From the IMG/VR virus record IMGVR_UViG_3300036766_002289, positions 248,001 to 312,000 of that record: DNA of 64,000 bases. One strand, 5' to 3'. The notes under the pieces are model-generated. The model was given only the letters and a program-made list of their open reading frames with translations. It searched no databases and was not told the origin of the DNA. Position numbers and translations under genes: made by a program. Shown one piece after another: positions 8,473 to 64,000 of the stretch (its first letter is position 1; each line of letters opens with the position of its first letter).

Positions 8473-8853
8473 ATTACTAAGGAATAAACATGGACTTATC
8501 ATTACAAATTACAGTATTAACTGTAGCGGGCCTGATTAGTGCCCTTTTAATAGGACTTGGTGCGTTTCTTGGCACAAGAGACGGCAACCCCGAACAAAAA
8601 GAGGCTAATAAGGTATTAGCTGGCCTATTTGGGTTCGCTGGTGTCGGCCTTCTAATATTCGCAATTGTAGTTGCAACAGGTTGGAAACCGCCCCGATAGC
8701 TTAGTTGTACCATCAGTGTCATGATTACCTACAAGCAAATCGAATGTTTACCACCAAATCATCCATTGGTCAAGCAGTATTACAGAGAACTGCAAGACTT
8801 TGAGATGTACGAAAAGCGTGTAGGTGACAATAATCCAGCGAACGGAGAAGAAG

Positions 8854-9478
8854 ATGCTACCCAAATGGCCCGCAATCCTGGTTGTCGGTAAGAAAGTTAC
8901 CGAACAGCAAGCTGCGCAAATTATTATTCGTACTTGTGGCATGTCTTTCTATACAAATGACCATAAGTACGAGAAGCAATTGTATGAAGCTGCTGGTATT
9001 AAGTTCAGCAAAGAACCTTTTCTTGACTATGACAGCGTAGATGCCGCCATTCTTAAGTATGGTTGCTGCAAGAAGCTTGATTATCTACAGAATCATCGCG
9101 TTGTTTCTAGCTGGATTGGTGGTTCTCATGGCTGGTGCGATTGGGACGGCAGCATTGGCTGCGATAATTATAATATCGGTAAATGGCCAAATGAAGAAGA
9201 AGTCTTGCAAGAATGGCAAACCATTGCCGAAGCCTTTCCTTATCTTGATCTTCGCTGCTCAATTAATGAGCGGTGAAAGTTGCGAAGAAAGCACGTATCC
9301 CCTTGTGGAATACAGTGTTAGCGAAGGGGAAGCGTTTATGTTTGAGCCTGGTGATAAGCTAATCGAACCAGTTGGGATTACTGATGAAGTCCTTTTGAAC
9401 AGGCTTAACAATCCATTGGCTGAACGTGGGTGTGATTTAGACCGATTTAAGTGGGCATTGAAAATTTGTGAGGTATAA
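8854..9478 (+). pseudogene. frameshifted hypothetical gene
   Basis: Removing one T near 9259 joins ...YLDLRC to QLMSGESCEE...; could be a sequencing error. Confidence 0.55.
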
Positions 9479-10115
9479 AATGTCTATTCAGTATGATGTA
9501 AAAAACAATCGCGTTAAGCACAAGCTTGATTATTTGTCCAACTATGACTTAGAAGGGGAGTTCGGCAAGGTAATTAAGTCCCTTGAAAAGAAATTTGAAG
9601 ACGAAAAGACTTATTATTCAACCGCCCGTAAGGTAAGTGAGACTAACTATAATGGCGGTGCTTATGCCGATGGTACCAGCACAAAAATGGTCACTTTTGA
9701 TAAGTTTTCTATTGAAATTGGCTATTTGGATGGCGACCATAAAGAACTCCAAATTTGGGGCGAACGTGATATCCTTCCCGAAGAGAATGAAGCCTTAATT
9801 AAAAAGGCACTTGAGGACAAGAAGAAGCATGATGAGTATAAGCGGGCACAGTATGAAGCATTAAAGAAGGAACTTGGCGAATGAATATTGAGAGTGGATT
9901 GCAGGTAATGGCAGACAAATACCCTAAGCACTTTGCAGATTTCATGAGTGAAGAAGATGATTGCGTTACTGCTGACGTTTTCCTTCAATGCTGTTTGTTT
10001 GGTGACATTATCTATGGCTAATTCCAAGGTTTGCAGAATAGTTATCCAAAGACTATTAAGCACAATCATTGTGCCAATTCTTGGCATAATTAGTTTTAAC
10101 ATGAGGTAAATTGTA

Positions 10116-10598
10116 GTGAGTGCGGATAAAGAAAGACGGCGAGAATATAACAGAAAATACTATTTAGATAACAAAAAAGAATTGGCGGTTAAAAAGCGAC
10201 AGCACTACCTGGCCAACCGAGAGTATTATGATGAAAAAACGCGGCAATGGAATAGGAATAATCCAGAAAAGCATCTAATAATCAGTAGACGGCAACGAAA
10301 AAAGTTAAGAGATAAATATGTTCCACGATTAGCTAAACTAGATGCAATCAAACTGAAATATGGCTGTTGTAATCCAGAATGTAAGTGGTGTGGGTCTTTT
10401 AAGTCGGTACAACTAGACTTTCATCATGTTGATCCTTCGACTAAGTTGTTTACTATTGGTGGTCGTAGGTTGGCTTTGGGTAATGATAAGATCGTGGCTG
10501 AAATAAACAAATGCACTGTCCTTTGTGCTGTTTGCCATAGAGATGTTGACAATTTGGATTGTAGCAAGTTTATAATTTGCACCGTTAGAGAATTTTAG
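10116..10598 (+). CDS. HNH homing endonuclease-like protein
   Basis: Basic helical N-terminus, CxxxxC, LDFHHVDP...EINKCTVLCAVCHR. Confidence 0.85.
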   Translation: MSADKERRREYNRKYYLDNKKELAVKKRQHYLANREYYDEKTRQWNRNNPEKHLIISRRQRKKLRDKYVPRLAKLDAIKLKYGCCNPECKWCGSFKSVQLDFHHVDPSTKLFTIGGRRLALGNDKIVAEINKCTVLCAVCHRDVDNLDCSKFIICTVREF

Positions 10599-10611
10599 CT
10601 TAGTTGTACCA

Positions 10612-10818
10612 TTAAGGGCACATCAAGTCTAACACGGCTGTAAAGCCAGCTAGGACTGATTTCCATTTTGCTGGAAAGAATGGGAATGCCGCTACCAATA
10701 CGATGATTGGTTTGGCCGCTTTGTAATATACACAAAGTTGGGCTGCTGGGTTTGCCGCATTGACTTGCGGGAGTGGTGCGAACGACGTAACGTGTTGGTC
10801 TACTGCTTCAAAATCCAT
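10612..10818 (-). CDS. small hypothetical protein (possibly membrane)
   Basis: AAGGAG RBS and TATATAAT upstream; hydrophobic C-terminal half. Confidence 0.65.
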   Translation of the reverse strand: MDFEAVDQHVTSFAPLPQVNAANPAAQLCVYYKAAKPIIVLVAAFPFFPAKWKSVLAGFTAVLDLMCP

Positions 10819-10849
10819 ATGAATCTCCTTTTGATTATATAGAAGCCAA

Positions 10850-10975
10850 GGTCAAATAAAAGCGTAGTTTAATGGCGTGCTGAAGGGCACTCTTAGAACA
10901 TCGGGCATGACAGCCCGAAGGTGCAGGGTGAGAACGACTCGCAAAGCGTTTATGCCTAATCCCTGCCGTTTGATT
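10850..10975 (+). ncRNA. tRNA-like RNA (initiator-tRNA-derived) with insertions in D and T loops
   Basis: TA-GTTT-AATGG..TA-GAAC D arm; TCGGG/CCCGA anticodon stem followed by AGGT; GCAGGG/CCCTGC T stem; GTCAAA/TTTGAT terminal pairing. Confidence 0.6.
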
Positions 10976-11186
10976 AAACAATGGGGAATTATTAATGAAA
11001 TACAAGTATGTGTCTATAACCTATTCTAACGAAGACAATATGATGGTAGAGTTAAACATTTTAGGCAAGTTTGGATGGGAACTTGTTTCAGTTTGTTATT
11101 GCGAGAGTCGTTTTGTCGCATTTTTAATGCAAAAGGAAGTCGATGAGCCTATTGCTTAGTTGTACCAGTAAATCAAAGGGGACAAA

Positions 11187-11381
11187 ATGACGAACTACAT
11201 CCCGTGTATGAAGTGTGCCCAACGATTTACTAAAGACTGGAATTGGTATATTTGCGACGAATGCGGCTATCGAGTATGTCAGAGTTGTTTTCCAAGGCAA
11301 ACTGGTCCTTATAATAACTCTGGCGGATTTAAGTGTTCACAGTGCCAATACGGACACCTCGAACAGGAGGATGATGACTAA
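11187..11381 (+). CDS. small zinc-finger protein
   Basis: Four CxxC motifs in 64 aa; RBS downstream of a motif copy. Confidence 0.7.
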   Translation: MTNYIPCMKCAQRFTKDWNWYICDECGYRVCQSCFPRQTGPYNNSGGFKCSQCQYGHLEQEDDD

Positions 11382-12042
11382 TGGAAATCCTGAATAAGCT
11401 TCTCAAGATGCAAGCTAAAGCTTTCACAGTTGAAGAACTTAAGTTCCTGATTAATTTGGATATTAAGTTGTTCCCGCATGATTATCTTCTTGGGAAGGAA
11501 GTTGAAAAGATTTACAATAGGCTCAGGGGTCTTCCGATGGAACAAGGTGGCATCGAAGGCGGGTATCAATTCTAATGAACGTTAGAACTATCCTAGAAAA
11601 TGCCAGGAATCTCTTGCCATTAGAGGTAAGAAGCGTCGAAACTAAGCCAATACCGCTTGGTCCTTTAACGGGCACCTTAGACGAATTTGATGAGTTTATG
11701 TCTCATAATGAATATGAATTAGCCTTTGATGCAATTGAGGTAGTGGGCTTTAAGGCAAAGGCTAGTTTGGAATTTTGGAGGACTTTGGCTCAAGCTGGAA
11801 TCGTAATGGGCCTTTTTAAGGAAATTAAAAATGGAAGCTATCAAGAATCAGTTGAACGATATCCTGAAGGATATGGAAATTCCCGCGATGAGACGGGAAT
11901 TAACCCCTCATAACCTTCGTTGGCTTGCTCGTAATCTTCATTTTAATAATCGAACGAAGCCTGAATTCGGCACTGCAATTCATTTTATCCAACATCTTTT
12001 ATGGTCCCAAGATGATAGTTCCTTAATCATTGGAGAATAACT

Positions 12043-12552
12043 ATGTCTACTTCGACTGACGGCCAGATTTGTTATGGTATCCCTTTTGAGAACTTGGACT
12101 TTCCTTGGGAAGGGAAGTATGAAGGTGACATTGAAAAATGGTGGCAAGACGTTAATGGATTTAAGCATTCTGTTGAGATTTATTCAGACACCGATAAAAG
12201 TGGTTATATTGACGGGCAAAAGCCTAAGCAGTCAGTGATTGATACATATTATAAGGAAGAAAGGGAGTGGCTGAAGACTAATCCACTGCCAGTTGAATTG
12301 GTGAATTATTGCAGTGGTGGAGCCCCACTTTATATTTTGGCAGTCCCCGAGTCTTTCAAAAGTAACAGCCGTGGGTTTCCGCTTGAATTCAACCCTGCCG
12401 AACTTCAGGTGACTCCAGAACAGAGACAGAATCTTATTGATTTCTGCGAGAAATATCTGGGAGAAAAGATTGCAAAACACAACGACGAAGAATACAATGA
12501 TGTTAAGATTACGCTGGAACCGAAATGGTATTTGACCAGCTATTGGGGGTAA
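12043..12552 (+). CDS. hypothetical protein
   Basis: GGAG RBS; 169-aa ORF. Confidence 0.7.
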   Translation: MSTSTDGQICYGIPFENLDFPWEGKYEGDIEKWWQDVNGFKHSVEIYSDTDKSGYIDGQKPKQSVIDTYYKEEREWLKTNPLPVELVNYCSGGAPLYILAVPESFKSNSRGFPLEFNPAELQVTPEQRQNLIDFCEKYLGEKIAKHNDEEYNDVKITLEPKWYLTSYWG

Positions 12553-13554
12553 GATGGATATTCATTTAACGAATGAACAAGCTAAATGGCTTGTTGCTCA
12601 TTTGGATGCTTTGCTTGAGGACCGAGATTGGGGCCGAGTCAAAATGGAAGCCGATCAACGGGAACATGCTCAAACTATTCACGATAAAATTGACAAAGTA
12701 TTAATTTCCAGGCAATGGTAATGTATAAAATACCAGAAGTTTTGTATGATGGCTGTATCTCCGATTGCTACATTGGAAAAGTAGTGAAAGTCCATAAAAA
12801 CAATCAATATAAGTTCTATACTTTCTGTGATTTGGAATTAGTGAAGCAATTACATGGCGACTGCAATTATTTGCATTTAGATGAGTATGCATTTACTACT
12901 ACCGTATATGATAATTGCCTATATTCTTGCGAACGATATAGTGATCTGCGTATTCCAGCAATTGGCTCCCTAATTCAGGTATTGACAGTAGGAATGGGTT
13001 ACGGTTGCCATCATTATCTTGAATTTCTTGAGAACATTGGAGATGCAGTGCCAGTCCCAGGCATGTATCATGAATTGGTTGCTAAACGAGTAGACAATTA
13101 TCAAATATAGGATTATACCCTAGTTGTACCTATGAAAAAGTCCAAGAAAATGTATCGGCTAGCGTTCCTTGTTGGGCTAATTCTTGCGCCATACATTATC
13201 ATGACAAATTTGAGAGACCTATGGAGTCTTTCAGGCATTATTATAGGCGTCTTATTTGTTACTATGCTCAGTTTAACTTTCTATGCTTCTAATCTTGAAG
13301 AACGAGGAGAATGAAATGCAATATATTGAAGGTTACTGGTGGGTTTGGCTCATTGGCATGGTCGTTACTTTCCTTTATGGCGGCTGGAATCAGACTTCAC
13401 GTATGAATCGAATGATGGCCCTTCAGCTAGAAACTAATTTCTTCCAAGGCGTTTATGCTTTGTTTGCCGCTGCCCTTCTTTATGTTGGATTCATGGTTCT
13501 GCTGATTACTTCTATCGTTCTCAATGTAATTCATTACGTAAAAGAGATTCAATA

Positions 13555-14109
13555 ATGTATCAGTATGTATTAGCATTGTCCTTATTGGCGTCTACTGACC
13601 CAATTCCTACTGGAATTGATGGCGAAAATTTATTCAATCATCTAAAAGCCAGTCTTATACAAATTTCCATTGAGAAAGAGATTCTTGACCCAAGAGAATC
13701 CAGATACATACTGACCTCCTTTTACAATTGCTTTTATCTTGATATGGAGTTATTGAGAAAAAGGTATCATGAATTCAAGGACGCCCCGCCTGTTGAAGAT
13801 GCAATGCGTTTCCCTGATCGGAAATATATTAATGAATTAATGGCTTTCAACGGGGAATATAGAAGTAATATGGATAGGATGGGGGAAGCATACAACCATA
13901 GAAGGGATGAATATAAAGAAGTAATAAAAGAAACAGATAAAATCAGATTGATTTTAGATGCTGCTTGGGATGCCAGTTGCGACTATTATTACGTGTCTGT
14001 CAGAAGGAATGCACTGCTTAAGCTAAAGTCGCTGATTGGTAATAACGCTTATTATTCTGGGGAATTGCCCCCACCAGTACCAGTATGGAGATTAAGGGAG
14101 ATTAAATGA
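13555..14109 (+). CDS. hypothetical protein with signal-peptide-like N-terminus
   Basis: Hydrophobic N-terminus VLALSLLAS; TAATG coupling to the upstream gene. Confidence 0.65.
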   Translation: MYQYVLALSLLASTDPIPTGIDGENLFNHLKASLIQISIEKEILDPRESRYILTSFYNCFYLDMELLRKRYHEFKDAPPVEDAMRFPDRKYINELMAFNGEYRSNMDRMGEAYNHRRDEYKEVIKETDKIRLILDAAWDASCDYYYVSVRRNALLKLKSLIGNNAYYSGELPPPVPVWRLREIK

Positions 14110-14524
14110 AAGTCTTAATGTACGGCAATCGTAAGGAGGGAAGTACTTATTGGGATATTAGTAATCCTGAAAAGGAAGTCGCTGGACTTAGGCGATTATT
14201 CCAGCACCTTGACGAAGACTGGCAAATGTTTGAAGTGGAAGAACACACCTTTGAAGAAGAAAAAGAAATCAAGGAATTAGAGGGCCTCAAGGAATTACTG
14301 GATAACAATAAGATTCCAGATATTCTATTGGAAATTTCCAAAAAGAAAGTGGCCCGCTTAGCGGAGATTCAGAAGGAAAAGCAAAATAACACAAAGCAAA
14401 TTGAATTGGCTAAAAGGGCACGGGCTGGTGATGCTTACGCCATTGGCAAGTTACTCCGTGCTGTTCAGCACACTGACTATGGTGAATGGTCAATCATTAA
14501 TGTAGCCAATCCGTTGGAGTAAAT

Positions 14525-14719
14525 GTGAAAACTCTTGAAGACATTACCAATATGCTCGCCAGTCATATGGGGTCTAAGGAAGCAGCAGAACTTTGGCTCA
14601 ATACCGTTGATCCTGTTGTTTCTAATGAAACCCCAAAAGAAACCATTGACAGAGGCAGAATCGACATTATTATTGCCTATCTAGAAGATCATTGGGGACC
14701 AGGCCCGAGTTATAGCTGA
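14525..14719 (+). CDS. antitoxin Xre/MbcA/ParS toxin-binding-domain-like protein
   Basis: GSKEAAELWLNT...ETP.E.I..GR pattern; no cognate RES toxin nearby. Confidence 0.5.
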   Translation: MKTLEDITNMLASHMGSKEAAELWLNTVDPVVSNETPKETIDRGRIDIIIAYLEDHWGPGPSYS

Positions 14720-14726
14720 GGTAACA

Positions 14727-15659
14727 ATGACCGATTGTTTAATCTGTCATAATCCTATCATTAGGCGTGCCCATCGTTCACCAAAATACCAACAGAAATA
14801 CTGTGGTATTGCTTGCCGCGATGAAGCCCTAAAGATATACAGCATCCAACCTTGCAAAGTGTGCAAAAGACTTTTTAAGAAACGTAGAAAAGGCACAGTT
14901 TGCTGCTCAGTGGAATGCTTCAATGCTAACAAAAAGAAACCATTAGACAAAGATGCTCTTATAGCTGCCATGCTTGAATGCAGATTTGGCCCGTTACCCA
15001 ATTGGACAAATATCTCCAAGAAACTTAAATGCTCCCATCATACAGCAGTTGATACAGCAAAGGAATTTAGCCTGATTGATTCCAAAAGACAAGGACCAAT
15101 CGTCGATGGACAATATTTACCTATCCCAGAAAAACCACCGCTTTCCATTGACCCTAACCTAACTTCTAAAGAAACCCTTGAAAAAGATTTAGTTGCCAAT
15201 AGAACCATAAATGGTTGCTGGCTATGGACTTGCAGAACTAACAGGCAAGGTTACGGGCTTATTTATTTGAATAGACCATATGACCGTGAGTTTTTGGTTA
15301 AGGCGGTTGCTCTTTATGTTTGGAAGGATTTACCATTAGATCAAAATAAGTTAATTTTCAATAAATGTGGTTTTAAGAATTGTTTTAATCCAAAGCATCT
15401 TAGGGTATGTAAGTCTAGGCGAGAAATGTCGAATTGTCTAGCTAAGGCGGGCAAACTTAGGGTGCCACTTGGTAAGCAGCATCCACGATGGAAGATTGAT
15501 TTGCCGATGGCTCTTGATATCAGGGACGGTATTAATATGGGCGAAACTAATAAGCAAATAGTTAAAAGACTTAAGGTGTCGTCGCTTATTGTCAATAATA
15601 TTCGTAAAAAGAGGACGTGGAAGTATATTTGGAAACTGAAGTCTGAATACATAGCTTAG
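14727..15659 (+). CDS. HNH endonuclease with N-terminal zinc fingers and C-terminal HTH
   Basis: YCGIAC/CCSVEC repeats; GCWLWT...GYG...CGFKNCFNPKHL. Confidence 0.75.
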   Translation: MTDCLICHNPIIRRAHRSPKYQQKYCGIACRDEALKIYSIQPCKVCKRLFKKRRKGTVCCSVECFNANKKKPLDKDALIAAMLECRFGPLPNWTNISKKLKCSHHTAVDTAKEFSLIDSKRQGPIVDGQYLPIPEKPPLSIDPNLTSKETLEKDLVANRTINGCWLWTCRTNRQGYGLIYLNRPYDREFLVKAVALYVWKDLPLDQNKLIFNKCGFKNCFNPKHLRVCKSRREMSNCLAKAGKLRVPLGKQHPRWKIDLPMALDIRDGINMGETNKQIVKRLKVSSLIVNNIRKKRTWKYIWKLKSEYIA

Positions 15660-16843
15660 TTGTACCAAAGGAGTTGAATATGATTGGCTGTATTATTATT
15701 GCTGAAGAGGAATGCAACGGCGAAGTATTTGAGTTTGAGACTCAAAAAGAAGCTGCCGCCTTTTGCACTGGAGTCCATGAAGGGGCAGGGCTTTATGGTT
15801 GCGGTTCTTGCAAAGCATATACGCTTGCAGATTTAGAGCAATTAGACTCAGAAGACGATGCCGAAGATATTGCATTTATTGAACAGTATTTGAGGTCTTA
15901 ATGGAACCATTCAATAAGTTACAACGCCATGTCCAACGGGCACATGGTTTTCTTGAACTTTATCAAATGACTGATTCTGAAGTAATGCGTCAGCGTTATG
16001 TCGATGAAATCAAGAATGCCTTGAACGACAAAGAAATTGAAGAGATGTTTGACCGCATGGCTTGGGAACACGAACAAGAACGAAGGCGAAATGAAACTTC
16101 CCATTGAATTAGATATTGAGTTAGACACAATCTGGACTGAGTATAAGTCTCAGCTTGAGAAGGTGCAAACTCCTGCCGAATTAACAGAATTTGTCAATCG
16201 TTGGCGGGAGATTTTCCTCATTGAGATGAAGGAAGTAAATCAGCAAACTTTGGATGATATTCGTACAGCAAATATGAATTTGTCCCCTCCCCGCACAATG
16301 GATAATTTGGTTGCTGAATTAATTCTTCCACGCAAGATTATGATGGCAATGATAAATGCACAAAGATACATTGTGCCACTTAATTGTGCTTTTATTCAGG
16401 GCAATGGTGGTTTAGGAGCTTTTTATGATGACTGAACGCGAAAAAGACCTTCATTTGAAGATTGTCTGTATTACTGCTCGCTTGATGAGCAATACCAAGT
16501 TTGATTCTTCTCAAACTAGGGCTGAATATCGCTCCAGTTTGGACGATCAAATCGAAAGCCTTGATGATTATGTTATTGACTTGCTTGCTGAACACTTAAA
16601 GGTTGCTGAACTTTATGACATTGTGGACCTTAATCACGATGATGGCCCAGAGACGGATGGACTGACATTCGTTGGGTCATATAAAGGTTACGGCATTCAT
16701 TCTGAAGACACTGGTTTTATGATTTCTAAAGGTATGGATTTTTTTCAAACTTCATTCGCTTCTGTTGAGATTTGTAAGTGGTTCATTGATGATGATATCG
16801 AGATTCAAGCATTAAAGAACACCGACCATCGTGGGCCACAACA

Positions 16844-17380: not shown

Positions 17381-17389
17381 GAGTTATAT

Positions 17390-17866: not shown

Positions 17867-18143
17867 TGATGTGCGTGCAATGCCCCCGAGATATACTCAT
17901 TGGGCAAAAACTGCAAGTCAAGCTATTAAGCTTCTCGAAACTGGAAAAGTAACAGAGTGTTCATTAGATCATGACTTAGGCAATCAGGTTGAAACGGGTT
18001 ATGATGTTGCTAAATGGATTGAGTACCATGCCCATGATGGCACACTTCCTAAAATCCGTTGCAAGGTTCATAGTCAAAATGTCGTAGGTGCAAAAAACAT
18101 CAAGATGGCTTTGCAAAGTGCCTATAGAGCTTGGGGAACTTAG
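17841..18143 (+). CDS. cyclic-phosphate-processing receiver domain protein
   Basis: LWLDDVR...SLDHDLG...TGYDVAKWI...VHSQNVVG signature. Confidence 0.8.
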   Translation: MNEIRLWLDDVRAMPPRYTHWAKTASQAIKLLETGKVTECSLDHDLGNQVETGYDVAKWIEYHAHDGTLPKIRCKVHSQNVVGAKNIKMALQSAYRAWGT

Positions 18144-54006: not shown

Positions 54007-54030
54007 TCATATCCTTTACTCTAATAGGAT

Positions 54031-55998: not shown

Positions 55999-56508
55999 AT
56001 GCTGACTAAGGACTTCTTGACCGCTGGCAAGGCCATCTTCACCCTCGAAATCCCCCATGACTTCGCCAACAGGAACAACACCAAACCCCATTACACTTGG
56101 AAAGTGTCCAAACCCAAAAACCCTTCCTCATTTCTTTTTGTTTCTCTTCTCACTGGTCCCGATAACACCAACGACTATAAGTATTTGGGTCTTCTCTTCC
56201 CCCGTAATGGCATTGTAAATCTCACGGCCAAAAGCAATTTCGACGCTAAGTCATGGCCTGTCTTGCTCTTGCATCGTATTTGTGCCAACCTTTGGGGCAC
56301 GAACAAGATTGAGGCTAGTGGCTTCAAGCTGCACCATGAGGGTTATTGCTGCAAGTGTGGTCGGCTCTTGACGGTGCCAAGTTCCATTGAAAGTGGAATT
56401 GGTCCAGAATGCGGCAAGAAGGCTGTTTTCTATGGTGCCCCTGTTGTGACGGCAATGGATATTGCCAGCAATGGTGGTATCTATGAAGATGTATATGGGG
56501 GCGATTAG
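55999..56508 (+). CDS. DUF6011 domain protein
   Basis: HEGYCCKCGRLLTVPSSIESGIGPEC. Confidence 0.8.
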   Translation: MLTKDFLTAGKAIFTLEIPHDFANRNNTKPHYTWKVSKPKNPSSFLFVSLLTGPDNTNDYKYLGLLFPRNGIVNLTAKSNFDAKSWPVLLLHRICANLWGTNKIEASGFKLHHEGYCCKCGRLLTVPSSIESGIGPECGKKAVFYGAPVVTAMDIASNGGIYEDVYGGD

Positions 56509-57101
56509 CCCTTATAATAACATACCTTAGTTGTACATTATAAGAAAAGGAGAAACATATGACCTGGCGTGACGTGCTGCGTGGTTTACAGAATATGGGC
56601 AATAGCAAGCTGGATAGTGAAGCATTGCTTTATCTTCCAGCCGCGTTCTACAAGGACAAGGGCGAAATCGTTGCCTTCTCAAGGTTTACGACGATTGACG
56701 GTGACGTAGCTGAGGAGCATGACTGTACTGAGGGTGATCCTATTCTTTTGCGGTATTAGGGATTGCCTAGTTGTACCGAATGTGCTATACTCAAAAGGGG
56801 ATTGTGATGAAAGCGTTTGTATATGAATTCAGGGATGGACAGGCAAAGTGTGGTACGGGCCGTGTTACGCCGAATTATAAGAATTTGGCTAACATGAAGC
56901 GCTATTTCATCCAGAATCTTCCTGCTGGTTGTTACCAAATTCTTGCTTTTTTTGATTGGGACAATCGGTATAAGGATGCTGACATAACCGAAGTGGTTAC
57001 TGTGTATGGTTATCCGCCCGAAGTGACACGGATTTCCGTTCATAAGGGCAAATTGCTTTTGGGCAACGGGTGGATGATACCTTAGTTGTACGGAGAATCA
57101 T

Positions 57102-57521
57102 ATGACTATTCTACTCTTGATGCAAGGTGCTTCTGGTTCGGGTAAGTCCACCAAGGCCGAGGAATTGGCTGTGGAGCTTGATGCCGTCATTTACTCCACC
57201 GACGATATTTTCGCTGAAAGTGGCACGTACATTTTCAATCCGAAGTTGTTGGGTGTGAACCACAAGAAGAACTTGGACCGCACCATTGAGGCATTGAAGG
57301 CGGGCAAGAACGTCATTGTGGACAATACCAATACTCAGCGGTGGGAATGCAAGGGCTACGTTGAAGCGGCTCTGGAGTTAGGGGTAGAGGTTCGCTTCCA
57401 TCGTTGTGTTGGCAATTACCAGAACATTCATGGCGTGCCGAGCTACAAGGTTCAGCAAATGCGTGACCGTCTTGAGGATTTGACGGTTGAAAGCGTCATG
57501 GCGAGCAAGAAGCCTTTTTAG
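57102..57521 (+). CDS. P-loop polynucleotide-kinase-like protein (AAA_33)
   Basis: GASGSGKST, STDD, VIVDNTN, HGVP; ATG at motif+10. Confidence 0.85.
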   Translation: MTILLLMQGASGSGKSTKAEELAVELDAVIYSTDDIFAESGTYIFNPKLLGVNHKKNLDRTIEALKAGKNVIVDNTNTQRWECKGYVEAALELGVEVRFHRCVGNYQNIHGVPSYKVQQMRDRLEDLTVESVMASKKPF

Positions 57522-58848
57522 CTTAGTTGTACCAATTAGGGTATGATTACCTCTAATAGGAGAACGGCGATGAAGATTATCTGGACGGATGCGACGGAGG
57601 CCCAATTGCTCAAAGACACGCCGAAGTTGCTGGAGATTCATGAAAGGGCTTTGAAGTCGGACCCCACATGGGCATTCTTCGGGGGCACAATCACTATCGG
57701 TGAGCATAGCTATCAGATAGCTTAGTTGTACCAATTAGGTTGTAATTCCTTTAACTGGAGAAAGCCATGAAGACTTGCGATTTGAAGTTGGGCGACATTG
57801 TTCACTACAAGGGCAACACTGGCTTCTACATGGACATGACTGTGGTGAGCATTTTCGATGATGAAGTCGTGGTGTGGCGTCCTTATATTTGGATGACACA
57901 AGATGGTCCAGAGTTGAAGACGGAAAAAATTGTCTTCAGCGTAGAATACTCCAAGATGGAGTGGGAAGTCAAGAGTCGCCGCGCCGATTTGAATGCCAAC
58001 CGCGATTGGTACAATTGCGGACATGAGGTACCGAAAAAGGCGGAAATCAGTTGGTGTGGCATAGCCTAGTTGTACCAAATTAGATAACTCTTACTGGAGT
58101 CCAAAATGGACACATTTGAATCAGATGAAGAAGTTGGGCACGAAGAAGAAGTCAAAGAGGCTACGCACAAGGGCGTAATTTTGGCTGAGGATGATTTTGA
58201 GCTTGACCAGCTTGTGGTGGTGCATAGTCTCAAGGGCACGCTTGATACGGCCCCAATTATGGGGCAACCGCTCAAGTTCAAGGCGATTTGTCTGCCCTTC
58301 ATTATTGCCACAATTGTCCTTGAAAATCGGCCAATCACGCTGGACGCACGGTATCTACACTTCATGAAAATCAGTGAAGAGTTTGTGCGGGCGCAAATGT
58401 CCTTGCCGAACCAGCAGCAACAGCAGAAGAAGGGACCGCAAGCATAGCTTAGTTGTACCAACCAAGACGTAACTTAACTCAGTGGAGAGTAGAGATGCGT
58501 TACTTTCTGAAGTTGTCAACGAAGGATGGCTGGTACGAAGAGGTGGACGAATACACCTACAAGAATGCGCCCTACGCTATGGACGAAGGGGGAAATGATC
58601 CCCGTTATTGTGTGGGTGGTATCACCACTGATGGCGTCACAGTGGACGCTGATTTGCGTGGGGTTCCGCTCCGTGACATAGCTATTTTCGCAAGGGCATT
58701 GCAAGCCTTGGAACCAGCAAAGGTTGATGGCGGCTTCATTCGTCCAATGCCCGCGATCATCTTCAAAAAGGGCCGTTCAAACTTCATGCGAACAGCAGAT
58801 GGCAAGGTGTGGAAATCGGTGGCTTAGCCTAGTTGTACCAAAACATTT

Positions 58849-58986
58849 GCCCCTGTAGTGTAAACGGTAGCATACCTAATCACGGTTCTAAGGTAACGGG
58901 AATTCACGTTATGCTTATCATCTGGGAAGTACAACTAGATGCTGCGTGGTTGGTGGAGCAGAAAATCGAAAACTGCCAGGGGCACC
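58849..58986 (+). ncRNA. tRNA-like RNA with anticodon loop replaced by a two-hairpin domain
   Basis: Acceptor GCCCCTG/CAGGGGC + ACC; D arm GTGT-AAACGGTA-GCAT; extended stem 58875-84/58945-53; T-like arm GCAG/CTGC; starts at motif+10. Confidence 0.7.
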
Positions 58987-59098
58987 CTAATCTAATTGAA
59001 ATTTATGACAGAAATAACCTTATACTCGGTCTGATAGTTGGGCGGTAAGCTGAAAAATGCTTATCGCCTCCCATAAAAAGAAACAATGATTTATATTG

Positions 59099-59128
59099 AA
59101 CCGCTATACAGCGTTGTATAGCGGTTTT
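59099..59128 (+). terminator. hairpin/terminator
   Basis: AACCGCTATACA/TGTATAGCGGTT followed by TT. Confidence 0.65.
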
Positions 59129-59510
59129 ATCTATATCTTAGTTGTACAAGGATTGTTATGATTGAAATACTTGACCTTAGCTGTGTGCCAGTTGATGAAA
59201 AGTGCGAGCAGTTGGGAGTCAATTATGACCCCACCAAGGCAATCAAGGAATGCCGTGCCTTCATCCGCCAATTGCGTCGGCAATTCGGTGAGGAACCATT
59301 CGGGGCGCAGTTGAAGATTACGTCCAATCCACATGACTTCGGCACCTATCATGAGGTGGCCGTCAAGTTCCATGACCAATTTGAGGAAGCAGTTGAATAC
59401 GCTTTCAAGTTGGAATCGGAATTGCCCGAAAAGTGGGACGATGGTGCGCTGCGAGAGTTGGGCCTATTTGACCGATTAGTTTCCTAAACCTTAGTTGTAC
59501 CAAAATCCCC

Positions 59511-60608
59511 ATGAACGTACAAGACTATCTTCGCTCTGGCAAGACTCTGGAAAACTTGACTTCCGAGCTTGCTATCAGCGTAACCAAGCATGACTCTCTG
59601 CCGCTGGTCATTCTCAATTATGACCAGATTGATTCGCCTAAGACCAATCCCATCGTGCGGGAATGTCGCGGTCTGGTTCTCCAGTCTGAGAACTATTCGC
59701 TGGTGGCCCGTGCTTTCGGTCGCTTCTTCAATTGGGGCGAAGTGGCTGACGAAATGCCCTTGTTCGACTGGAACACTTGCATTGCCGACGAAAAGGCCGA
59801 TGGTTCCCTTGTCCTCATCTATAACTTTGAAGGCCAGTGGCTTGCCAATACCCGTGGCTCTTTCGCTGGTTGGCCTATCTTCAATGATGAATACAAGGCA
59901 AAGTATTTCGGCGTTGACCCGTCAATGCGCTGGTCCGATGCCTTCCTAAAGGCGCTGAACGTCAACAGCCTTGATGAGTTAAACCTTGACCCGTCCATTA
60001 CTTACGTCTGTGAGTTCTGTTCGCTGTGGAACAAGGTTGTACGGGAGTATCCTACTCCGTGCATGTATCTGTTGACGCGGTTTGCTGGTGAGCAAGAGAT
60101 TGGCCCTTTGACTCATCCCGCATTCCGAACGTTGCAGCGATTTCCCTTGACGAATGTTCAGGAAGTGCAGAACTTTTGCACGGATCATCCCGAAGCAACC
60201 TTTGAGGGGGTGGTTGTGAAGGACTCCAGCTATCGCCGCTGGAAGCTGAAGAATCCGCGATACGTGTCTCTGCACCACATGAAGGGCAATGGGGATGGCA
60301 TGTGGCGTCCTAAGTATATGCTGCCCTATATCCTCAAGAATGAAGGCGATGAACTGTTGACCTACTTCCCCGAAATCACCGAACTCTATAATGAGTATAG
60401 GGATAAGGTGAATGCAGAGTATGTCATGCTGGAGGCGCTCTGGCTGAAGAACAAGGACATTGTGAACCAAAAGGAATTCGCTTTGTCCATTGTGGGGAAG
60501 ACTCCGTTCACTGGTGTTTTGTTCAATCTCCGTAGGGATGGTGGGGATTTGAAGCGGTCGTGGTTGAACCATGAGGATGGAATCTTAAAGGTGCTGTTCA
60601 AAGCTTAG
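59511..60608 (+). CDS. T4 Rnl1-like RNA ligase
   Basis: RECRGLVL, FFNWGE, EKADGSL (motif I Lys), TRGS, EGVVV, KLKN; ATG at motif+10. Confidence 0.9.
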   Translation: MNVQDYLRSGKTLENLTSELAISVTKHDSLPLVILNYDQIDSPKTNPIVRECRGLVLQSENYSLVARAFGRFFNWGEVADEMPLFDWNTCIADEKADGSLVLIYNFEGQWLANTRGSFAGWPIFNDEYKAKYFGVDPSMRWSDAFLKALNVNSLDELNLDPSITYVCEFCSLWNKVVREYPTPCMYLLTRFAGEQEIGPLTHPAFRTLQRFPLTNVQEVQNFCTDHPEATFEGVVVKDSSYRRWKLKNPRYVSLHHMKGNGDGMWRPKYMLPYILKNEGDELLTYFPEITELYNEYRDKVNAEYVMLEALWLKNKDIVNQKEFALSIVGKTPFTGVLFNLRRDGGDLKRSWLNHEDGILKVLFKA

Positions 60609-60615
60609 TTGTACC

Positions 60616-60744
60616 AATTTGGTCTGATGACTCCCACTGATTACCTATGGGGCAGTGCGGTGGAGTTAGGGTGAGCAAGCCCTAGCGAAAAAGGTATAAA
60701 GAGCAACCGTCATTCCGTGGATTTGCTGCACGGATTCTTTTTTC
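60616..60744 (+). ncRNA. candidate small structured RNA with its own terminator
   Basis: Lies between two motif copies with only a 15-codon ORF; stems GACTCC/GGAGTT, CACTG/CAGTG, TAGGG/CCCTA; terminator TCCGTG/CACGGA + T-tract. Confidence 0.55.
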
Positions 60745-61407
60745 CTTAGTTGTACCGAGTTCATCATGGCTGAACTTTTGGTTTGCATCGACAAAGACTT
60801 GATTGAAATTAACGTCACGCATGAACGTGATGGTGGTTTCCCTAATCCAGGGTGGGAATCAGCGGGATGGTTCCCTTCTATTCATGACGCTTTGACCGAA
60901 GGCAAGCTGTGGCTGGACATGGGCAAGGACATGGGCCTCAAACGTGGGGCTAGAAGTCGTCCTCGTTACTGGTTGCAAGCGGCCTAAACCTTAGTTGTAC
61001 CAATTCAATCATGAAACAATTCTACATTGAAGTGATGATGCCGCCCTTCCCGATCAAAGGGAAGAAGTTCAAAGTCTGGTCAACCTATCCTGGCGATGCG
61101 TTGTCGCCTGATTTGACCATGTTGTTCAGCGTATGGGCGTTGGACAAGGAAGATGCAATTTCCAAGACGCTTTCGGGTGAAGCACATACGTTGCTTTCCC
61201 CCAATGCGAAGAAGCTTCAACTAGCATAAGGGGATACGATGATGGGTTGGCAGCGAAAACAAGATGAAAAGCGGAAGCTGAACGGTCAGAAGGACTGGAC
61301 ACGCGAACAGAAGGAGCAAATGAGGTTGTTTCTGAAGCAGTATCCACAAGGAGGGGAGCATGACCGAGAACGGCGAAAAGCTGGATGACCTTTGGATTGA
61401 TTTGGGC

Positions 61408-61439
61408 GGGGAAGGCTAAAAGGGGCCTTCCCCTTTTTT
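61408..61439 (+). terminator. intrinsic terminator
   Basis: GGGGAAGGC/GCCTTCCCC followed by T7. Confidence 0.85.
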
Positions 61440-62089
61440 GTTCCTATAATTAGCTTAGTTGTACTAATTAGGCTGTGATTCCTAAAACAGGAGCAGAACA
61501 TGAACGAACGACATGCGGGAATTCCGTGGATACCTGAAGCAATGCACGGATAAGCAGGTGCAAGGCGTCTACGATAAGGAAAACGAAGCTGACCGCGACA
61601 ATTACGCAGAATTGGCGATTGCGGAAGCAGAACGTCGTGGCATTATGCTGGACCTTAAACCTTAGTTGTACCAATTAGGCTGTGATTTAACCCTTGCGGA
61701 GGATCGTCATGGGTAACATCGAAGCCTTGGAAATGGTCGCCGTTCTTGCCAATTCGGCCCGCGAACAACTCTTGAAGGGCGAAAAGCCCTGCATCAGCAA
61801 TCTCAACCGTATCATCCACCTTGCCGTGACCGTCGAACGGGAATTCGATGAACAATGGCAAGCGGAAGGAGAGAAGAATGAGAATTGCAGTTGATTACGT
61901 AGACGGGGACTATAGGGAATATAATAGCCTCGAAGCTGCCGTCGAATTCATCATGGACCATGAGGCCGAAGTAGAACGCATCTATGAGGTTGACGTGGGC
62001 CAAGCTAAAATCAAAGAATACGGGTGCGAATGGAGTTTGAAGCTGGTAGAATTATAGCTTAGTTGTACCAATTAGGTTGTAATTAACCC

Positions 62090-62181
62090 CAAACAGGAGC
62101 AAGGTCATGCGTTATTGGATTCGTCACGAAGACCTCAAACAGGAGCAAGGTCATGCGTTATTGGATTCGTCACGAAGACCT
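62090..62181 (+). repeat. perfect 46-bp tandem duplication of RBS plus first codons
   Basis: 62090-62135 is identical to 62136-62181; CAAA microhomology at the junctions. Confidence 0.9.
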
Positions 62182-62398
62182 CAAAACGGCAAATTATTGT
62201 GACAACTATGATTGCCCGCTTGCACGGGCCGTCAAGCGGAAACATCCCCTCGTCCATGTCCAAGTCAATTCCCGCTATGTTTTCATGAACGGCAAGGCTT
62301 ACCACATTGCCACGCCGTCCGCTGACAAGCTGCTGTCATGGTCATGCAAAGAAATCATTCTCGACAAGGGCTTCCATGTCCGTCTCAGTGCGGCCTAG
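62153..62398 (+). CDS. hypothetical protein ending -SAA (paralog of 62919-63215)
   Basis: Shares MRxWIRxxDLxTANY...DCxLARAxKRK...KGFHVRL. Confidence 0.75.
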   Translation: MRYWIRHEDLKTANYCDNYDCPLARAVKRKHPLVHVQVNSRYVFMNGKAYHIATPSADKLLSWSCKEIILDKGFHVRLSAA

Positions 62399-62918
62399 TT
62401 TCAGGGTTCGCCCAACCCTGGCTTTACCTTAGTTGTACCAATTAGGTTGTGATTTCTTACCCTTTACCTGGAGTCTTGACAATGGGCAATGCTTTCCGTC
62501 TGGCCAAGCTGCTGGTGATCGAGAATCCCAATCGTTCCGCCAAGTCCATCCGAGAGGAAATCGAGAAGATGACGGGCATCAACCTCGATGGCCGCGTGAT
62601 CGGCGGCGAGAAGCGCATCCTCATCTATCGCAAGGGCAAAGCGGCCTAAGCCAAGGGGTCGCCCACCCTGGCTTAACCTTAATGGAGAAATCCCATGAAT
62701 GAAGAACTCAAAATCAAGCTCCACGAAATGCTCGAATCGTATTCAAGTCAACTTGATACGATTTGGTATAACTCTGATTCGGGTTCGCACATGGATTGGT
62801 GCCGTAGGCAACAAGCTGAGATTGCCGAACTCATTGCCGAACTCGAAGCTGTTGACGCGATTTGCTGGTAGGCATAACTTAGTTGTACCAATTAGGTTGC
62901 CCAAAACAGGAGAATACA

Positions 62919-63215
62919 ATGCGTTTTTGGATTCGTCTGGCTGACCTCCGAACGGCGAACTACAGTAGCAATACGGACTGCTTTTTGGCCCGCGCCATCA
63001 AGCGTAAAATCCCAAAGGCTAAGGTTCTGGTCCATCCCGATTTTGTCGAGGTGGGTAAAACTCACTACGCGATTGTCGGCAATGGAGTGGACCGACTCAA
63101 AGAGGACCATGACACCAAGGAAAAAGGCTTCCACGTCCGACTCCGTAAAGTGAGTGGCTGGCTAGAGTGTAACCAAGCGAAAGCCGCAATTGACCACATC
63201 AGGACGTTCAATTAG
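62919..63215 (+). CDS. hypothetical protein (paralog of 62153-62398)
   Basis: AGGAG RBS; shared motifs as above. Confidence 0.75.
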   Translation: MRFWIRLADLRTANYSSNTDCFLARAIKRKIPKAKVLVHPDFVEVGKTHYAIVGNGVDRLKEDHDTKEKGFHVRLRKVSGWLECNQAKAAIDHIRTFN

Positions 63216-63264
63216 CTTAGTTGTACCAATTAGGTTGTGATTCAACCCAAACAGGAGAACGGCC

Positions 63265-63393
63265 ATGTTTGAAGTCATTCGCAACGGCAAGGTTCTGTTC
63301 CGCAATGCTTCCTATCAGCGTTGTCTCCAATTCAAGGCCCGCCACAAGCTCAATGCCATCATTCGGCCCATGCCCCAAATGCTCGCGGCCTAA
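63265..63393 (+). CDS. 42-aa basic protein ending -LAA (absent from the ORF track)
   Basis: AGGAG RBS; MFEVIRNGKVLFRNASYQRCLQFKARHKLNAIIRPMPQMLAA. Confidence 0.7.
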   Translation: MFEVIRNGKVLFRNASYQRCLQFKARHKLNAIIRPMPQMLAA

Positions 63394-63671
63394 GCCAAGG
63401 GGTCGCCCACCCCTGGTTCTATACCCTAGTTGTACCGAGGTTCACATGCTTATTCCCCGCGCCGTAGTGTTTGATTCAAAAGGCAAAGCTCTTTGTGCTG
63501 GCAATCCCTGCAATGGTTACTCTCATCGCACCGACTGCCGCCATACGACCATGCACCTACCATCGGAACATTTCGATTTTATCGACGTGAACGTGGAAGG
63601 CAAGACTGAGGCCGAAATCATGTATGAAATCACGGCGGAATACCACATCTAAGGGCCATTCAGGTCTGAGT

Positions 63672-63810
63672 TGAGAGTGGCTTAAAATAGGAGCAAACCT
63701 ATCCGTGGCCGCATTAACTTCGGTTAGTGCCCGCCCAAGAAAGTAACGGGAGCCAACGGGAAACACCCTCCAAAAGTGGATTACCAATGACTCATCAATA
63801 ACCGCTCTTA
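63672..63810 (+). ncRNA. candidate multi-hairpin structured RNA
   Basis: Closing stem TGAGAGTGG/CCGCTCTTA; ATAGG/CCTAT; GCATTAAC-TTCG-GTTAGTGC; GGG/CCC; TCCA/TGGA. Confidence 0.6.
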
Positions 63811-64000
63811 CCTTAGTTGTACCAATTAGGTTGTGATTCCACCCCAACAGGAGCAAAGTCATGCTGGTTCTCGACAATCCCAAAGACATTGCCGCCTTCC
63901 GTAAGTTGGCACTACGTAGTGCTTTAGGGCTGGAAATGAAGGGCTTCAAACGGCATGGACCGTCTTGCTTCTCCATCATCAAGGCCGAATTCGGGCTGAA

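What the first reader, a model, noticed from the sequence alone, without database searches (positions are those of the whole stretch)
8697..63823. 65-copy motif that fixes a start point exactly 10 nt downstream: a phage-specific promoter system making leaderless mRNAs
Seen: CYTAGTTGTACH lies almost always at gene junctions, on the coding strand. In 23 copies exactly 9 nt separate it from an ATG (8721, 18165, 21466, 22127, 28821, 34983, 35830, 37925, 38976, 40139, 40821, 44323, 46025, 50126, 51480, 51841, 57102, 57543, 59158, 59511, 60766, 61011, 63446), mostly without an SD. Two tRNA-like RNAs (53967, 58849) begin at the same offset. In copies with longer leaders the same position is usually a pyrimidine|purine step (tt|GTGATT, ac|GTAAC, gc|AGATT). 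Inference: the motif occupies -21..-10 of a start site. It has no -35 partner and fits neither sigma70 nor sigma54, which points to a phage sigma factor, RNAP or activator encoded elsewhere. The alternative is an RNA-processing signal that cuts 9 nt downstream.
Basis: partly seen in the sequence, partly recalled or inferred. Interest (0 to 1): 0.9.

Follow-up and report, generated by a model that had tools for sequence, protein, structure and literature searches.

The report
Private promoter of a huge phage
A 590-kb uncultured phage places the same 19-base promoter in front of almost every gene in this region, probably starting RNA 10 bases downstream so that about a third of the genes get messages with no leader, and three related huge phages each use their own version of the signal.

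Summary
CYTAGTTGTACH occurs 64 times against 0.03 expected. With two one-base variants there are 65 plus-strand copies and one minus-strand copy. An ATG follows after exactly 9 nt in 23 of the 65 plus-strand copies (1.5 expected, P about 1e-22), and none follows after 8 nt.

The conserved unit is a contiguous 19-nt block, BWTAS-CYTAGTTGTACC-AA, with nothing conserved upstream. It sits at gene junctions in 63 of 65 copies, often contains the upstream gene's stop codon, and in several places follows a strong terminator.

The window lies in a 590-kb phage contig. Three related huge phages each use only their own variant: CTTAGCTGTACC, TGAGGTTGTACT and TAAAGCTGTACT. Their architecture and ATG peak are the same. 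This is a phage-specified promoter family.

A start at +10, giving leaderless mRNAs, is favoured at about 60%. The support is the single-base-sharp ATG spike, a pyrimidine/purine step at +9/+10 outside the ATG class, and leader modules shared between phages that begin exactly at +10. A TG...AAT frame also matches an extended -10 element.

The main rival, at about 22%, is a start at the block's edge giving 9-nt leaders. About 20 genes carry good Shine-Dalgarno sequences inside the spacer.

No RNA polymerase or complete sigma factor was found in the one complete relative. The tRNA claims hold only in part.

The parts
8695..63825 (+). Array of 65 same-strand copies of the 19-nt promoter block. 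Density rises from about 1 per 3 kb to 1 per 350 bp toward the right end.
   Evidence: 12-mer starts: 8700 10599 11155 13119 15655 18144 21445 22106 28800 29771 30829 32940 34962 35809 36646 37904 38955 40118 40800 41828 42763 44302 44641 46004 46557 47066 47714 49095 49576 49776 50105 50611 51459 51820 52066 52310 52903 53087 53583 53946 54461 55144 55564 55949 56526 56766 57081 57522 57721 58065 58448 58828 59137 59490 60604 60745 60990 61454 61661 62058 62428 62878 63216 63425 63812
8695..63448 (+). Class 1: copies followed by an ATG after exactly 9 nt (candidate leaderless genes). There are 22 with ORFs of 35-365 aa.
   Evidence: ATG at 8721 18165 21466 22127 28821 34983 35830 37925 38976 40139 40821 44323 46025 50126 51480 57102 57543 59158 59511 60766 61011 63446
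59485..59503 (+). Example of class 1: promoter block of the RNA ligase gene (ATG 59511, 365 aa). The spacer AAAATCCCC has no SD.
   Evidence: The N-terminus is anchored by homology: residue 18 aligns to position 20 of PHROG 562, and Pfam RNA_lig_T4_1 matches. The JGI gene call uses the same start.
38950..38968 (+). Class 1 block. ATG 38976 opens a 224-aa ORF. The upstream ORF ends on the TAG inside the block.
51409..51445 (+). Strong intrinsic-terminator-like hairpin (11 pairs plus a T run), 14 nt upstream of the next block.
   Evidence: Upstream fold of -18.9 kcal/mol.
51454..51472 (+). Class 1 block directly after that terminator. ATG 51480, 114-aa ORF, spacer AAAAACCAT.
   Evidence: With read-through blocked, this gene must use this promoter.
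61408..61443 (+). Strong terminator-like hairpin (10 pairs, 7 GC, T run) just upstream of the block at 61449-61467.
63807..63863 (+). Example of class 2: the block, then spacer AATTAGGTT, then the leader module GTGATT...ACAGGAG and ATG 63861. About 24 copies share this module in the window and its right-hand extension.
55559..55599 (+). Block preceded by a terminator-like hairpin (55540-55555). The Shine-Dalgarno AGGAGG begins exactly at +10. ATG at 55597.
15650..15682 (+). Counter-example class: a canonical SD (AAGGAG) lies inside the 9-nt spacer and the ATG is at +14 (15680, 73 aa). Similar cases follow the blocks at 41828, 42763, 55144, 29771, 36646 and 52066.
45934..45952 (-). The only minus-strand copy. 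It faces away from the + copy at 46004, 57 nt apart, forming a divergent pair.
45999..46017 (+). Plus-strand partner of the divergent pair (CCTAGTTGTACA).
51815..51915 (+). Block followed after 11 nt by tRNA-Glu(UUC) at 51843-51915.
   Evidence: Rfam does not score this tRNA.
53941..53992 (+). Block followed at +10 by a 26-nt copy of the 5' part of tRNA-Leu. It is a fragment, not a tRNA.
54374..54457 (+). Intact tRNA-Leu(UAA). The next promoter block starts 3 nt after its end.
58823..58985 (+). Block followed at +10 by a 137-nt structured RNA-like element. Its first 7 nt pair with its last 7 in an acceptor-like stem. It is not recognised as a tRNA.
   Evidence: z-score -2.77
49090..49108 (+). 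Copy inside a 236-aa ORF, a possible internal promoter. The copy at 63420-63438 is the other one inside an open frame.
57076..57094 (+). Variant copy ending ...TACG. ATG 57102 at +10, 139-aa ORF.
49571..49589 (+). Variant copy starting GTTAG. SD-led ATG at 49626.

Best explanation
The repeat is the main promoter of the non-structural (early or middle type) half of a ~590-kb phage. The functional unit is a contiguous 19-bp block, BWTAS CYTAGTTGTACC AA.

Its 5' half differs between related phages, so it is read by a phage-encoded specificity factor. Its 3' part (TGTACY AA) is shared by all four phages. It lines up with an extended -10 element: TG at -15/-14 and AAT at -9 to -7.

The most likely enzyme is the host's multisubunit RNA polymerase, redirected by an unidentified phage factor. 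It would open the DNA downstream of the block and start at the purine 10 nt after the 12-mer, about 7 nt after the AA.

Where that purine is the A of an ATG (22 genes here), the mRNA has no leader and is translated in the leaderless mode. Elsewhere the transcript starts with a short reusable leader module that carries a Shine-Dalgarno sequence.

Shown: the repeat, its spacing, its position at junctions, and the private variants in relatives. Inferred: the start point, the enzyme and the mode of translation.
For: Promoter identity.
- 64 copies against 0.03 expected, 63 on the coding strand.
- 63 of 65 copies lie at gene junctions.
- Strong terminators lie directly upstream of several copies.
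- There is a divergent pair at 45.9-46.0 kb.
- Sigma-70-like sites are at chance level, 26 against 28.1.

Phage-encoded specificity. Four related phages each use exclusively one variant: 81, 38, 32 and 47 copies with no cross-use. The closest relative (89% identical DUF932 protein) differs by one invariant base. In the complete relative LR756511 the motif covers one half of the genome and is absent from the other 300 kb.

Start at +10.
- The ATG spike is one base wide in three phages: 23 of 65, 8 of 37 and 9 of 32 after 9 nt, with none after 8 nt. In LR756511 it falls at +9 to +11.
- Outside the ATG class, +9 is a pyrimidine and +10 a purine in 50/65 and 59/65 (this phage), 25/28 and 26/28 (L154), and 21/22 and 20/22 (L155).
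- Leader modules shared between phages and between unrelated genes (GTAACTYAACTCA, GTTCCGACAC) begin exactly at +10. The 9-nt spacers in front of them follow each phage's own pattern.
- Several Shine-Dalgarno sequences begin exactly at +10.

Enzyme. No T7-like polymerase and no multisubunit polymerase motif was found anywhere in LR756511.

Precedents. A promoter box about 10 nt upstream of start codons is the accepted signature of leaderless transcription (PMC6028130). AR9 and phiKZ virion-polymerase promoters are a conserved block followed by 6 N and a purine start (PMC5312081).
Against: - No RNA 5' ends are available, so the start point is inferred.
- About 20 genes across the four phages have their ATG at +11 to +20 with a well-placed canonical SD inside +1 to +9. 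Examples are AAAGGAGTTGAATATG here and AAGGAGGAACAAATG in LR756511. With a start at +10 these SDs are used only on read-through transcripts from upstream promoters.
- SD start positions run fairly continuously from +1 to +12, with no sharp edge at +10.
- The -12/-11 positions (AC) do not match the TA that sigma-70-type factors need.
- No complete sigma factor was found. The only sigma-like protein is a 124-aa sigma-70 region-4-only ORF in LR756511. No counterpart of it could be located in this phage.
- C before ATG is also common at SD-led starts here, so part of the Y/R signal in the ATG class is not specific.
- Recognised tRNAs start at +12, not +10.
Confidence: 0.6

Rival explanations
1. 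Same promoter, different start point. Transcription begins at the A directly after GTACC, so the block spans -17 to +2, as in T7-type single-subunit polymerase promoters. The 22 genes then have 9-nt leaders, mostly without SD. The enzyme would be a phage polymerase too divergent to recognise.
For: - The block is 19 nt, contiguous and almost invariant. It is bounded at exactly -17 and +2 on this numbering, with an A/T-rich 5' end, phage-specific bases in the middle and a shared 3' part. This is the layout of T7, T3 and SP6 promoters (T7 layout from general knowledge).
- The first base after the block is a purine in 77 of 81 copies and the base before it is a pyrimidine.
- Every gene with its ATG at +12 to +14 has a good SD within +1 to +8.
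- The complete relative has four unannotated ORFs of 968-1639 aa that could hide a polymerase.
Against: - There is no T7-like polymerase in the complete 595-kb relative (phmmer --max). Pfam found no polymerase domain among its 26 largest ORFs.
- This model gives no reason for a one-base-sharp preference for a 9-nt leader without SD.
- It gives no reason for the Y/R step at +9/+10 in unrelated leaders.
- It gives no reason for shared leader modules to begin exactly at +10.
- The 5' hairpin that would have required transcription of the spacer was not supported: 63.5% paired against 61% in shuffles, and no RNAalifold consensus.
Confidence: 0.22
2. The block is an RNA signal. Long read-through transcripts are cut 9 nt downstream of it by a phage-specific endonuclease, which releases leaderless mRNAs and the ends of structured RNAs.
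For: The boundary at +9/+10, the ATG spike and the structured RNA that starts at +10 would look the same for a cut as for a start. Genes are tightly packed on one strand, so polycistronic RNA is plausible.
Against: - Strong terminators lie 5-20 nt upstream of several copies, so the signal would often not be transcribed.
- No other promoter candidates exist to make the precursor. Sigma-70-like sites are at chance level across 20 kb.
- The back-to-back divergent pair at 45.9-46.0 kb is typical of promoters.
- The 12-mer forms no structure of its own, and no ruler-type RNase of this kind is known.
Confidence: 0.07
3. The block is recognised by an ordinary host sigma factor of an unknown host. It would be the host's own promoter type copied by the phage, not a phage-specific system.
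For: The host is unknown. The shared TGTACY-AA part resembles an extended -10 or an ECF-type -10 element (inference).
Against: Closely related phages differ systematically in the 5' half, and by a single invariant base between the two closest relatives, with no cross-use. That is not expected if a conserved host factor reads it. The block is absent from the structural half of LR756511.
Confidence: 0.05

Closest known systems
Leaderless-type bacterial promoters: -10 box about 10 nt upstream of the start codon, as in Mycobacterium, Deinococcus and GeneMarkS-2 'group C' genomes (PMC6028130). From general knowledge, also the middle/late promoters of Thermus phage P23-45.
   Same: A conserved promoter element lies at a fixed short distance from the ATG. 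There is a pyrimidine/purine step at the start. Leaderless and SD-led genes are mixed in one genome.
   Different: The element is a 19-bp near-invariant block, not a loose TANNNT. It lacks the TA at -12/-11. It is specific to one phage, and relatives have their own versions.
T7/T3/SP6-family promoters of single-subunit phage RNA polymerases
   Same: A contiguous, almost invariant block of about 19 bp is used dozens of times. The central positions are phage-specific and the 3' part is shared within a family of phages. There is no -35 element.
   Different: No such polymerase is detectable in the complete relative. The sequence evidence places the start about 8 nt beyond the conserved block, not at its edge.
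Early promoters of phiKZ-like jumbo phages read by the virion RNA polymerase, e.g. AR9 AAATATATATTAT-(6N)-G+1 (PMC5312081)
   Same: Jumbo phage. A long conserved block is followed by a short unconserved spacer and a purine start. It is very sensitive to single-base changes.
   Different: Those blocks are AT-rich and read by a split beta/beta' polymerase. That enzyme's DFDGD motif is absent from LR756511. AR9 and phiKZ leaders are 26 nt or longer and no leaderless transcripts were seen (PMC5312081, PMC8244752).
T4 middle and late promoters: MotA/AsiA sigma appropriation, and gp55 (general knowledge)
   Same: The phage has a T4-type portal and terminase. Host polymerase would be redirected by phage factors to a promoter without a normal -35 element.
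   Different: The MotA box is separated from the -10 element by about 12 bp, and the T4 late element is TATAAATA. No convincing gp55 homologue was found (best E 0.022). MotA and AsiA were not searched for.
Sigma-54 promoters (-24 GG / -12 GC)
   Same: On the +10 numbering the conserved DNA spans about -26 to -8 and ends about 10 nt before the start, as for sigma-54.
   Different: There is no GG-N10-GC. The block is continuous, not bipartite. No RpoN homologue was found in the relative.

Membership tests
Phage-specific promoter (generic) | Over-represented, strand-specific and located upstream of genes | tested here: met
   64 copies against 0.03 expected, 63 on the + strand. 63 of 65 lie at junctions.
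Phage-specific promoter (generic) | Sequence co-varies with the phage lineage | tested here: met
   Four phages have four exclusive variants.
Phage-specific promoter (generic) | Primary (5'-PPP) transcripts start at a fixed distance from the motif | not testable with these tools
   No transcript data are available for this uncultured phage.
Leaderless-type promoter | Promoter element at a fixed distance of about 10 nt from the ATG in many genes | tested here: met
   23 of 65 copies have an ATG after exactly 9 nt (P about 1e-22). Relatives show the same peak.
Leaderless-type promoter | No SD between the element and the ATG | tested here: met
   About 16 of 22 spacers lack GGAG, GAGG and AGGA.
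Leaderless-type promoter | -10 consensus TANNNT | tested here: not met
   The aligned hexamer is ACCAAT, or TACCAA in the other frame.
T7-type single-subunit RNAP promoter | Contiguous conserved block of about 17-23 bp | tested here: met
   A 19-nt block.
T7-type single-subunit RNAP promoter | Cognate T7-like RNA polymerase gene in the genome | tested here: not met
   None in the window. None in the complete relative LR756511. The rest of this contig was not seen.
T7-type single-subunit RNAP promoter | Start at the 3' edge of the conserved block | tested here: inconclusive
   SDs inside the spacer argue for it. The spike, the Y/R step and the module boundary at +10 argue against it.
phiKZ-type virion RNAP promoter | Split beta/beta' polymerase genes with a DFDGD motif | tested here: not met
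   No DFDGD or D.DGD in an RNAP-like context in LR756511.
Sigma-54 promoter | GG and GC doublets 10 bp apart, and an RpoN protein | tested here: not met
   The consensus lacks them. There is no RpoN hit.
Sigma-70 housekeeping promoter | -35 TTGACA and -10 TATAAT separated by 16-18 bp | tested here: not met
   Nothing is conserved upstream of the block or at +17 to +22. Consensus sites are at chance level.
   53967 is a fragment and 58849 is not called. Recognised tRNAs start at +12.

The most novel reading that the evidence does not exclude
A clade of 160-600-kb phages with no recognisable RNA polymerase, and apparently no complete sigma factor, runs half of each genome from a private 19-bp promoter. 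An unknown phage-encoded specificity factor reads it. That factor could be a new kind of sigma substitute, perhaps built around a stand-alone sigma region-4 domain, or a cryptic polymerase. The start is placed on the A of the ATG, so a quarter to a third of these genes are made as leaderless mRNAs. Specificity can be reset by a single base between sister phages.
Probability: 0.4. Interest if true: 0.75.

Novelty: new variant of a known kind. Interest (0 to 1): 0.62.

Why it matters
Huge phages are known almost only from metagenomes, and how they organise transcription is essentially unknown. This is a ready-made, testable regulatory code. One 19-bp signal marks more than 80 transcription units in this phage, and homologous private signals mark those of three relatives.

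- It improves gene-start calling, because the ATG at +10 is the start.
- It separates temporal modules, because the structural half of the complete relative lacks the signal.
- It gives a natural set of orthogonal promoter variants whose recognition factor could be found by co-variation.
- If the start is at +10, it would be large-scale use of leaderless translation by a phage that also carries many tRNAs and an L7/L12-like protein. That bears on how huge phages take over host translation.

Tried and rejected
1. 5' hairpin in the AATTAGGKT...ACCCTAA leaders, which would have proved that the spacer is transcribed. Pairing was 63.5% against 61% in shuffles, and RNAalifold gave no consensus. The relative's leaders lack it. 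Rejected as evidence.
2. The 12-mer's TTGTAC as a -35 element. Nothing is conserved 17 bp downstream. Rejected.
3. Stop-codon reassignment as the reason for the short ORFs. No stop codon stands out.
4. Literature search for the motif, and for promoters or leaderless mRNAs in megaphages. Nothing relevant was found.
5. Scan of viral contigs for DNA encoding NADFDGD.
6. The three other contigs that hold the 17-mer (L001, L004, L011) have a single copy each, consistent with chance.
7. Host identification through the TnpB gene. The best hit is 68% to a Proteobacteria MAG contig, which is not decisive.
8. Sigma and polymerase hunt in the complete relative.
   - RpoD, RpoN and RpoE queries found only a 124-aa region-4-only ORF.
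   - Its neighbours are uninformative.
   - No relative of it was found in IMG/VR or the protein database.
   - T7 RNAP found nothing.
   - T4 gp55 gave only E 0.022.
   - Four ORFs of 968-1639 aa have no PHROG annotation and no PDB match.
9. Terminator-preceded promoters were checked for the SD-in-spacer class. None was found, but there are too few for a test.
10. Start-codon type (ATG against GTG/TTG) as a test for leaderless starts. It has no power, because nearly all starts here are ATG.

Full report
WHAT IS THERE

The pattern CYTAGTTGTACH matches 64 times in the window, 63 on the + strand, against 0.03 expected. Allowing one further mismatch adds 57081 (...TACG) and 49576 (GTTAG...). That gives 65 + strand copies and one - strand copy at 45936-45947.

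A position-by-position tally was made over 81 copies from the window plus its right-hand extension. It shows a contiguous conserved block of 19 nt: B-W-T-A-S, the 12-mer, then A-A. Nothing is conserved further upstream, so there is no -35 partner.

Only 2 of 65 copies lie inside long open frames. In 35 of 65 the stop codon of the upstream ORF is the TAG or TAA inside the block. Strong terminator-like hairpins sit just upstream of the blocks at 51459, 61454, 47066, 62428 and 55564. Sigma-70-like sites in 44-64 kb are at chance level, 26 against 28.1.

THE SPACING

An ATG follows after exactly 9 nt in 23 of 65 copies. The expectation is 1.5 per offset, so P is about 1e-22. There are none after 8 nt and 3 after 10 nt. 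Twenty-two of these ATGs open ORFs of 35-365 aa.

For the RNA ligase (ATG 59511) the start is confirmed by homology over the N-terminus and by the JGI gene call. The remaining ATG, at 51841, lies 2 nt before a tRNA-Glu.

WHERE THE WINDOW COMES FROM

The window is identical to part of IMG/VR UViG 3300036766_002289, at positions 248,001-312,000. That is part of JGI contig Ga0373622_0000005 of 590,099 bp, at roughly 448-512 kb. Motif copies continue on both sides of the window.

The window encodes small accessory genes: methyltransferases, a SAM lyase, a Lar-like protein, HNH endonucleases, TnpB, DUF932, an RNA ligase and an L7/L12-like protein. It encodes no sigma factor and no RNA polymerase. 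Other pieces of the contig carry a dense tRNA array.

RELATIVES

The only DNA-level relative among deposited phages is LR756511.1, a 595-kb uncultured phage. Its first 21 kb carry about 55 copies of its own repeat, TAAAGCTGTACT, in the same architecture.

Over the whole genome the repeat's core 8-mer, AGCTGTAC, occurs 55 times on the + strand in 0-20 kb. It occurs 77 times on the - strand from 20 to about 300 kb with falling density. It is essentially absent from the other 300 kb. That other half holds the T4-type portal and terminase.

A search with the DUF932 protein found two more relatives. L154 is from a 373-kb contig (89% identity). L155 is from a 160-kb contig (64% identity). They use CTTAGCTGTACC (38 copies) and TGAGGTTGTACT (32 copies).

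No phage uses another phage's variant. The family pattern is five variable bases, then Y-TGTAC-Y, then R-A. The closest pair differs at a single position that is invariant within each phage.

This is the behaviour of a promoter that co-evolves with a phage-encoded recognition factor. It argues against an ordinary host sigma factor.

WHERE DOES RNA START?

Evidence for +10, the tenth base after the 12-mer:
- The ATG peak is one base wide here (23 of 65), in L154 (8 of 37) and in L155 (9 of 32), with none one base closer. In LR756511 it spreads over +9, +10 and +11. Only start-site selection by a polymerase is known to measure distance from a DNA signal at this resolution, and leaderless translation needs the AUG at the very 5' end.
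- Outside the ATG class, +9 is a pyrimidine and +10 a purine in 50/65 and 59/65 here, 25/28 and 26/28 in L154, and 21/22 and 20/22 in L155. In the 37 heterogeneous leaders of this phage the counts are 26/37 and 33/37.
- Leader modules are re-used between phages and between unrelated genes. GTAACTYAACTCA occurs in all four phages. GTTCCGACAC occurs before orthologous genes in L154 and L155. ACCTCTAAC occurs in LR756511. All begin exactly at +10, while the nine bases before them follow each phage's own pattern.
- Several Shine-Dalgarno sequences begin exactly at +10, including four AGGAGG in L155.
- With +1 at that position, TG falls at -15/-14 and AAT at -9 to -7. This is the frame of an extended -10 element with a normal 6-nt discriminator (inference).
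- A promoter box about 10 nt from start codons is the accepted signature of leaderless transcription (PMC6028130). AR9 and phiKZ virion-polymerase promoters are likewise a block, 6 N and a purine start (PMC5312081).

Evidence for a start at the edge of the block:
- The block would then span -17 to +2, as in T7-type promoters.
- About 20 genes in the four phages have their ATG at +11 to +20 with a canonical SD inside +1 to +9. If RNA starts at +10, those SDs work only on read-through transcripts. That is possible, because all these genes abut an upstream gene with no terminator between them, but it is less economical.
- A 5' hairpin that would have settled the matter was not supported.

WHICH ENZYME?

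The complete relative has no T7-like polymerase. It has no DFDGD-type motif. Pfam finds no polymerase domain among its 26 ORFs of 600 aa or more.

The only sigma-like protein found is a 124-aa ORF consisting of sigma-70 region 4 alone. Its neighbour was searched separately and is uninformative. Four ORFs of 968-1639 aa remain without any match.

Host polymerase redirected by an unidentified phage factor is therefore the most likely model, and it favours a start several bases beyond the conserved DNA. A cryptic phage polymerase is not excluded. I could not inspect the remaining roughly 500 kb of this phage's own contig.

RNA PROCESSING

A cut at +9/+10 would explain the boundary as well as a start does. 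Three things argue against it: terminators directly upstream of several copies, the lack of any other promoter candidates, and the divergent pair.

THE tRNA ARGUMENT

The element at 53967 is a 26-nt copy of the 5' part of the neighbouring tRNA-Leu. An HNH endonuclease ORF separates it from the intact gene. The element at 58849 is a 137-nt structured sequence closed by a 7-bp stem that starts at +10 (z-score -2.77), but it is not a recognisable tRNA. The two recognised tRNAs that directly follow a block, here and in L008, start at +12.

VERDICT

The promoter reading is well supported. A start at +10 with leaderless mRNAs is the best-supported mechanism, at about 0.6. A start at the block edge is the serious rival, at about 0.2.

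I found no published description of this motif family. It is a new variant of a known kind: a private phage promoter, here in huge phages without a recognisable polymerase.

Noticed in passing
window 53967-54457: An HNH endonuclease ORF (about 54031-54370) sits between a 26-nt copy of the 5' part of tRNA-Leu and the intact tRNA-Leu. This looks like the scar of a homing insertion that duplicated part of the tRNA gene.
   Followed up: partly
window 58849-58985: A 137-nt structured element (-46.7 kcal/mol, z-score -2.77) has an acceptor-like closing stem followed by ACC. It is not called by ARAGORN or Rfam. It contains an antisense near-copy of the promoter 12-mer at 58927-58940.
   Followed up: partly
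window 25604-26773: A full-length TnpB/IS605 OrfB gene (389 aa, with HTH, OrfB and zinc-ribbon domains) lies inside the phage. The closest genomic relative is 68% identical, on a Proteobacteria MAG contig.
   Followed up: partly
window 7628-8038: An ORF with a ribosomal protein L7/L12 C-terminal domain (Pfam E 3.9e-12), as reported for huge phages. It lies in the short motif-free stretch at the left of the window.
   Followed up: no
window 1-64000: G+C rises steadily from 0.39 to 0.49 from left to right, in parallel with promoter density and with shrinking gene size.
   Followed up: no
window 57534-63840, L002 6836-10920, L134 (LR756511): In the long-leader class a degenerate second copy of the promoter core lies directly downstream of the true one. 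Here it is AATTAGGTTGTRATT and in LR756511 it is AAAAGCTTTACC. It overlaps the presumed start and could be a second binding site for the factor (shut-off) or a relic of duplication.
   Followed up: no
window, 35 of the 65 + strand copies: The stop codon of the upstream gene is the TAG inside the 12-mer (20 cases) or the TAG/TAA in its 5' flank (15 cases), so genes and promoters overlap.
   Followed up: yes
L008 (same contig, outside the window): 25 tRNA genes lie in 10 kb, with promoter copies between the clusters. LR756511 has about 50 tRNAs, including one with anticodon CTA (reads UAG) at L138 11588-11661.
   Followed up: no
L138 22451-22825 (LR756511, about 190.5 kb): A stand-alone 124-aa protein consisting of sigma-70 region 4 only (Pfam E 5e-12). 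It was the only sigma-like protein detected in that 595-kb genome.
   Followed up: partly
window 58460-58495, L154 17941, L155 14162, L134 5124: The same leader module (GTAACTYAACTCA...GGAG) precedes unrelated genes in four phages, so promoter-leader cassettes appear to be re-used as units.
   Followed up: partly
window 49095 and 63425: Two promoter copies lie inside open reading frames (236 aa and 143 aa). They could be internal promoters giving shorter products, or the ORFs are over-called.
   Followed up: no
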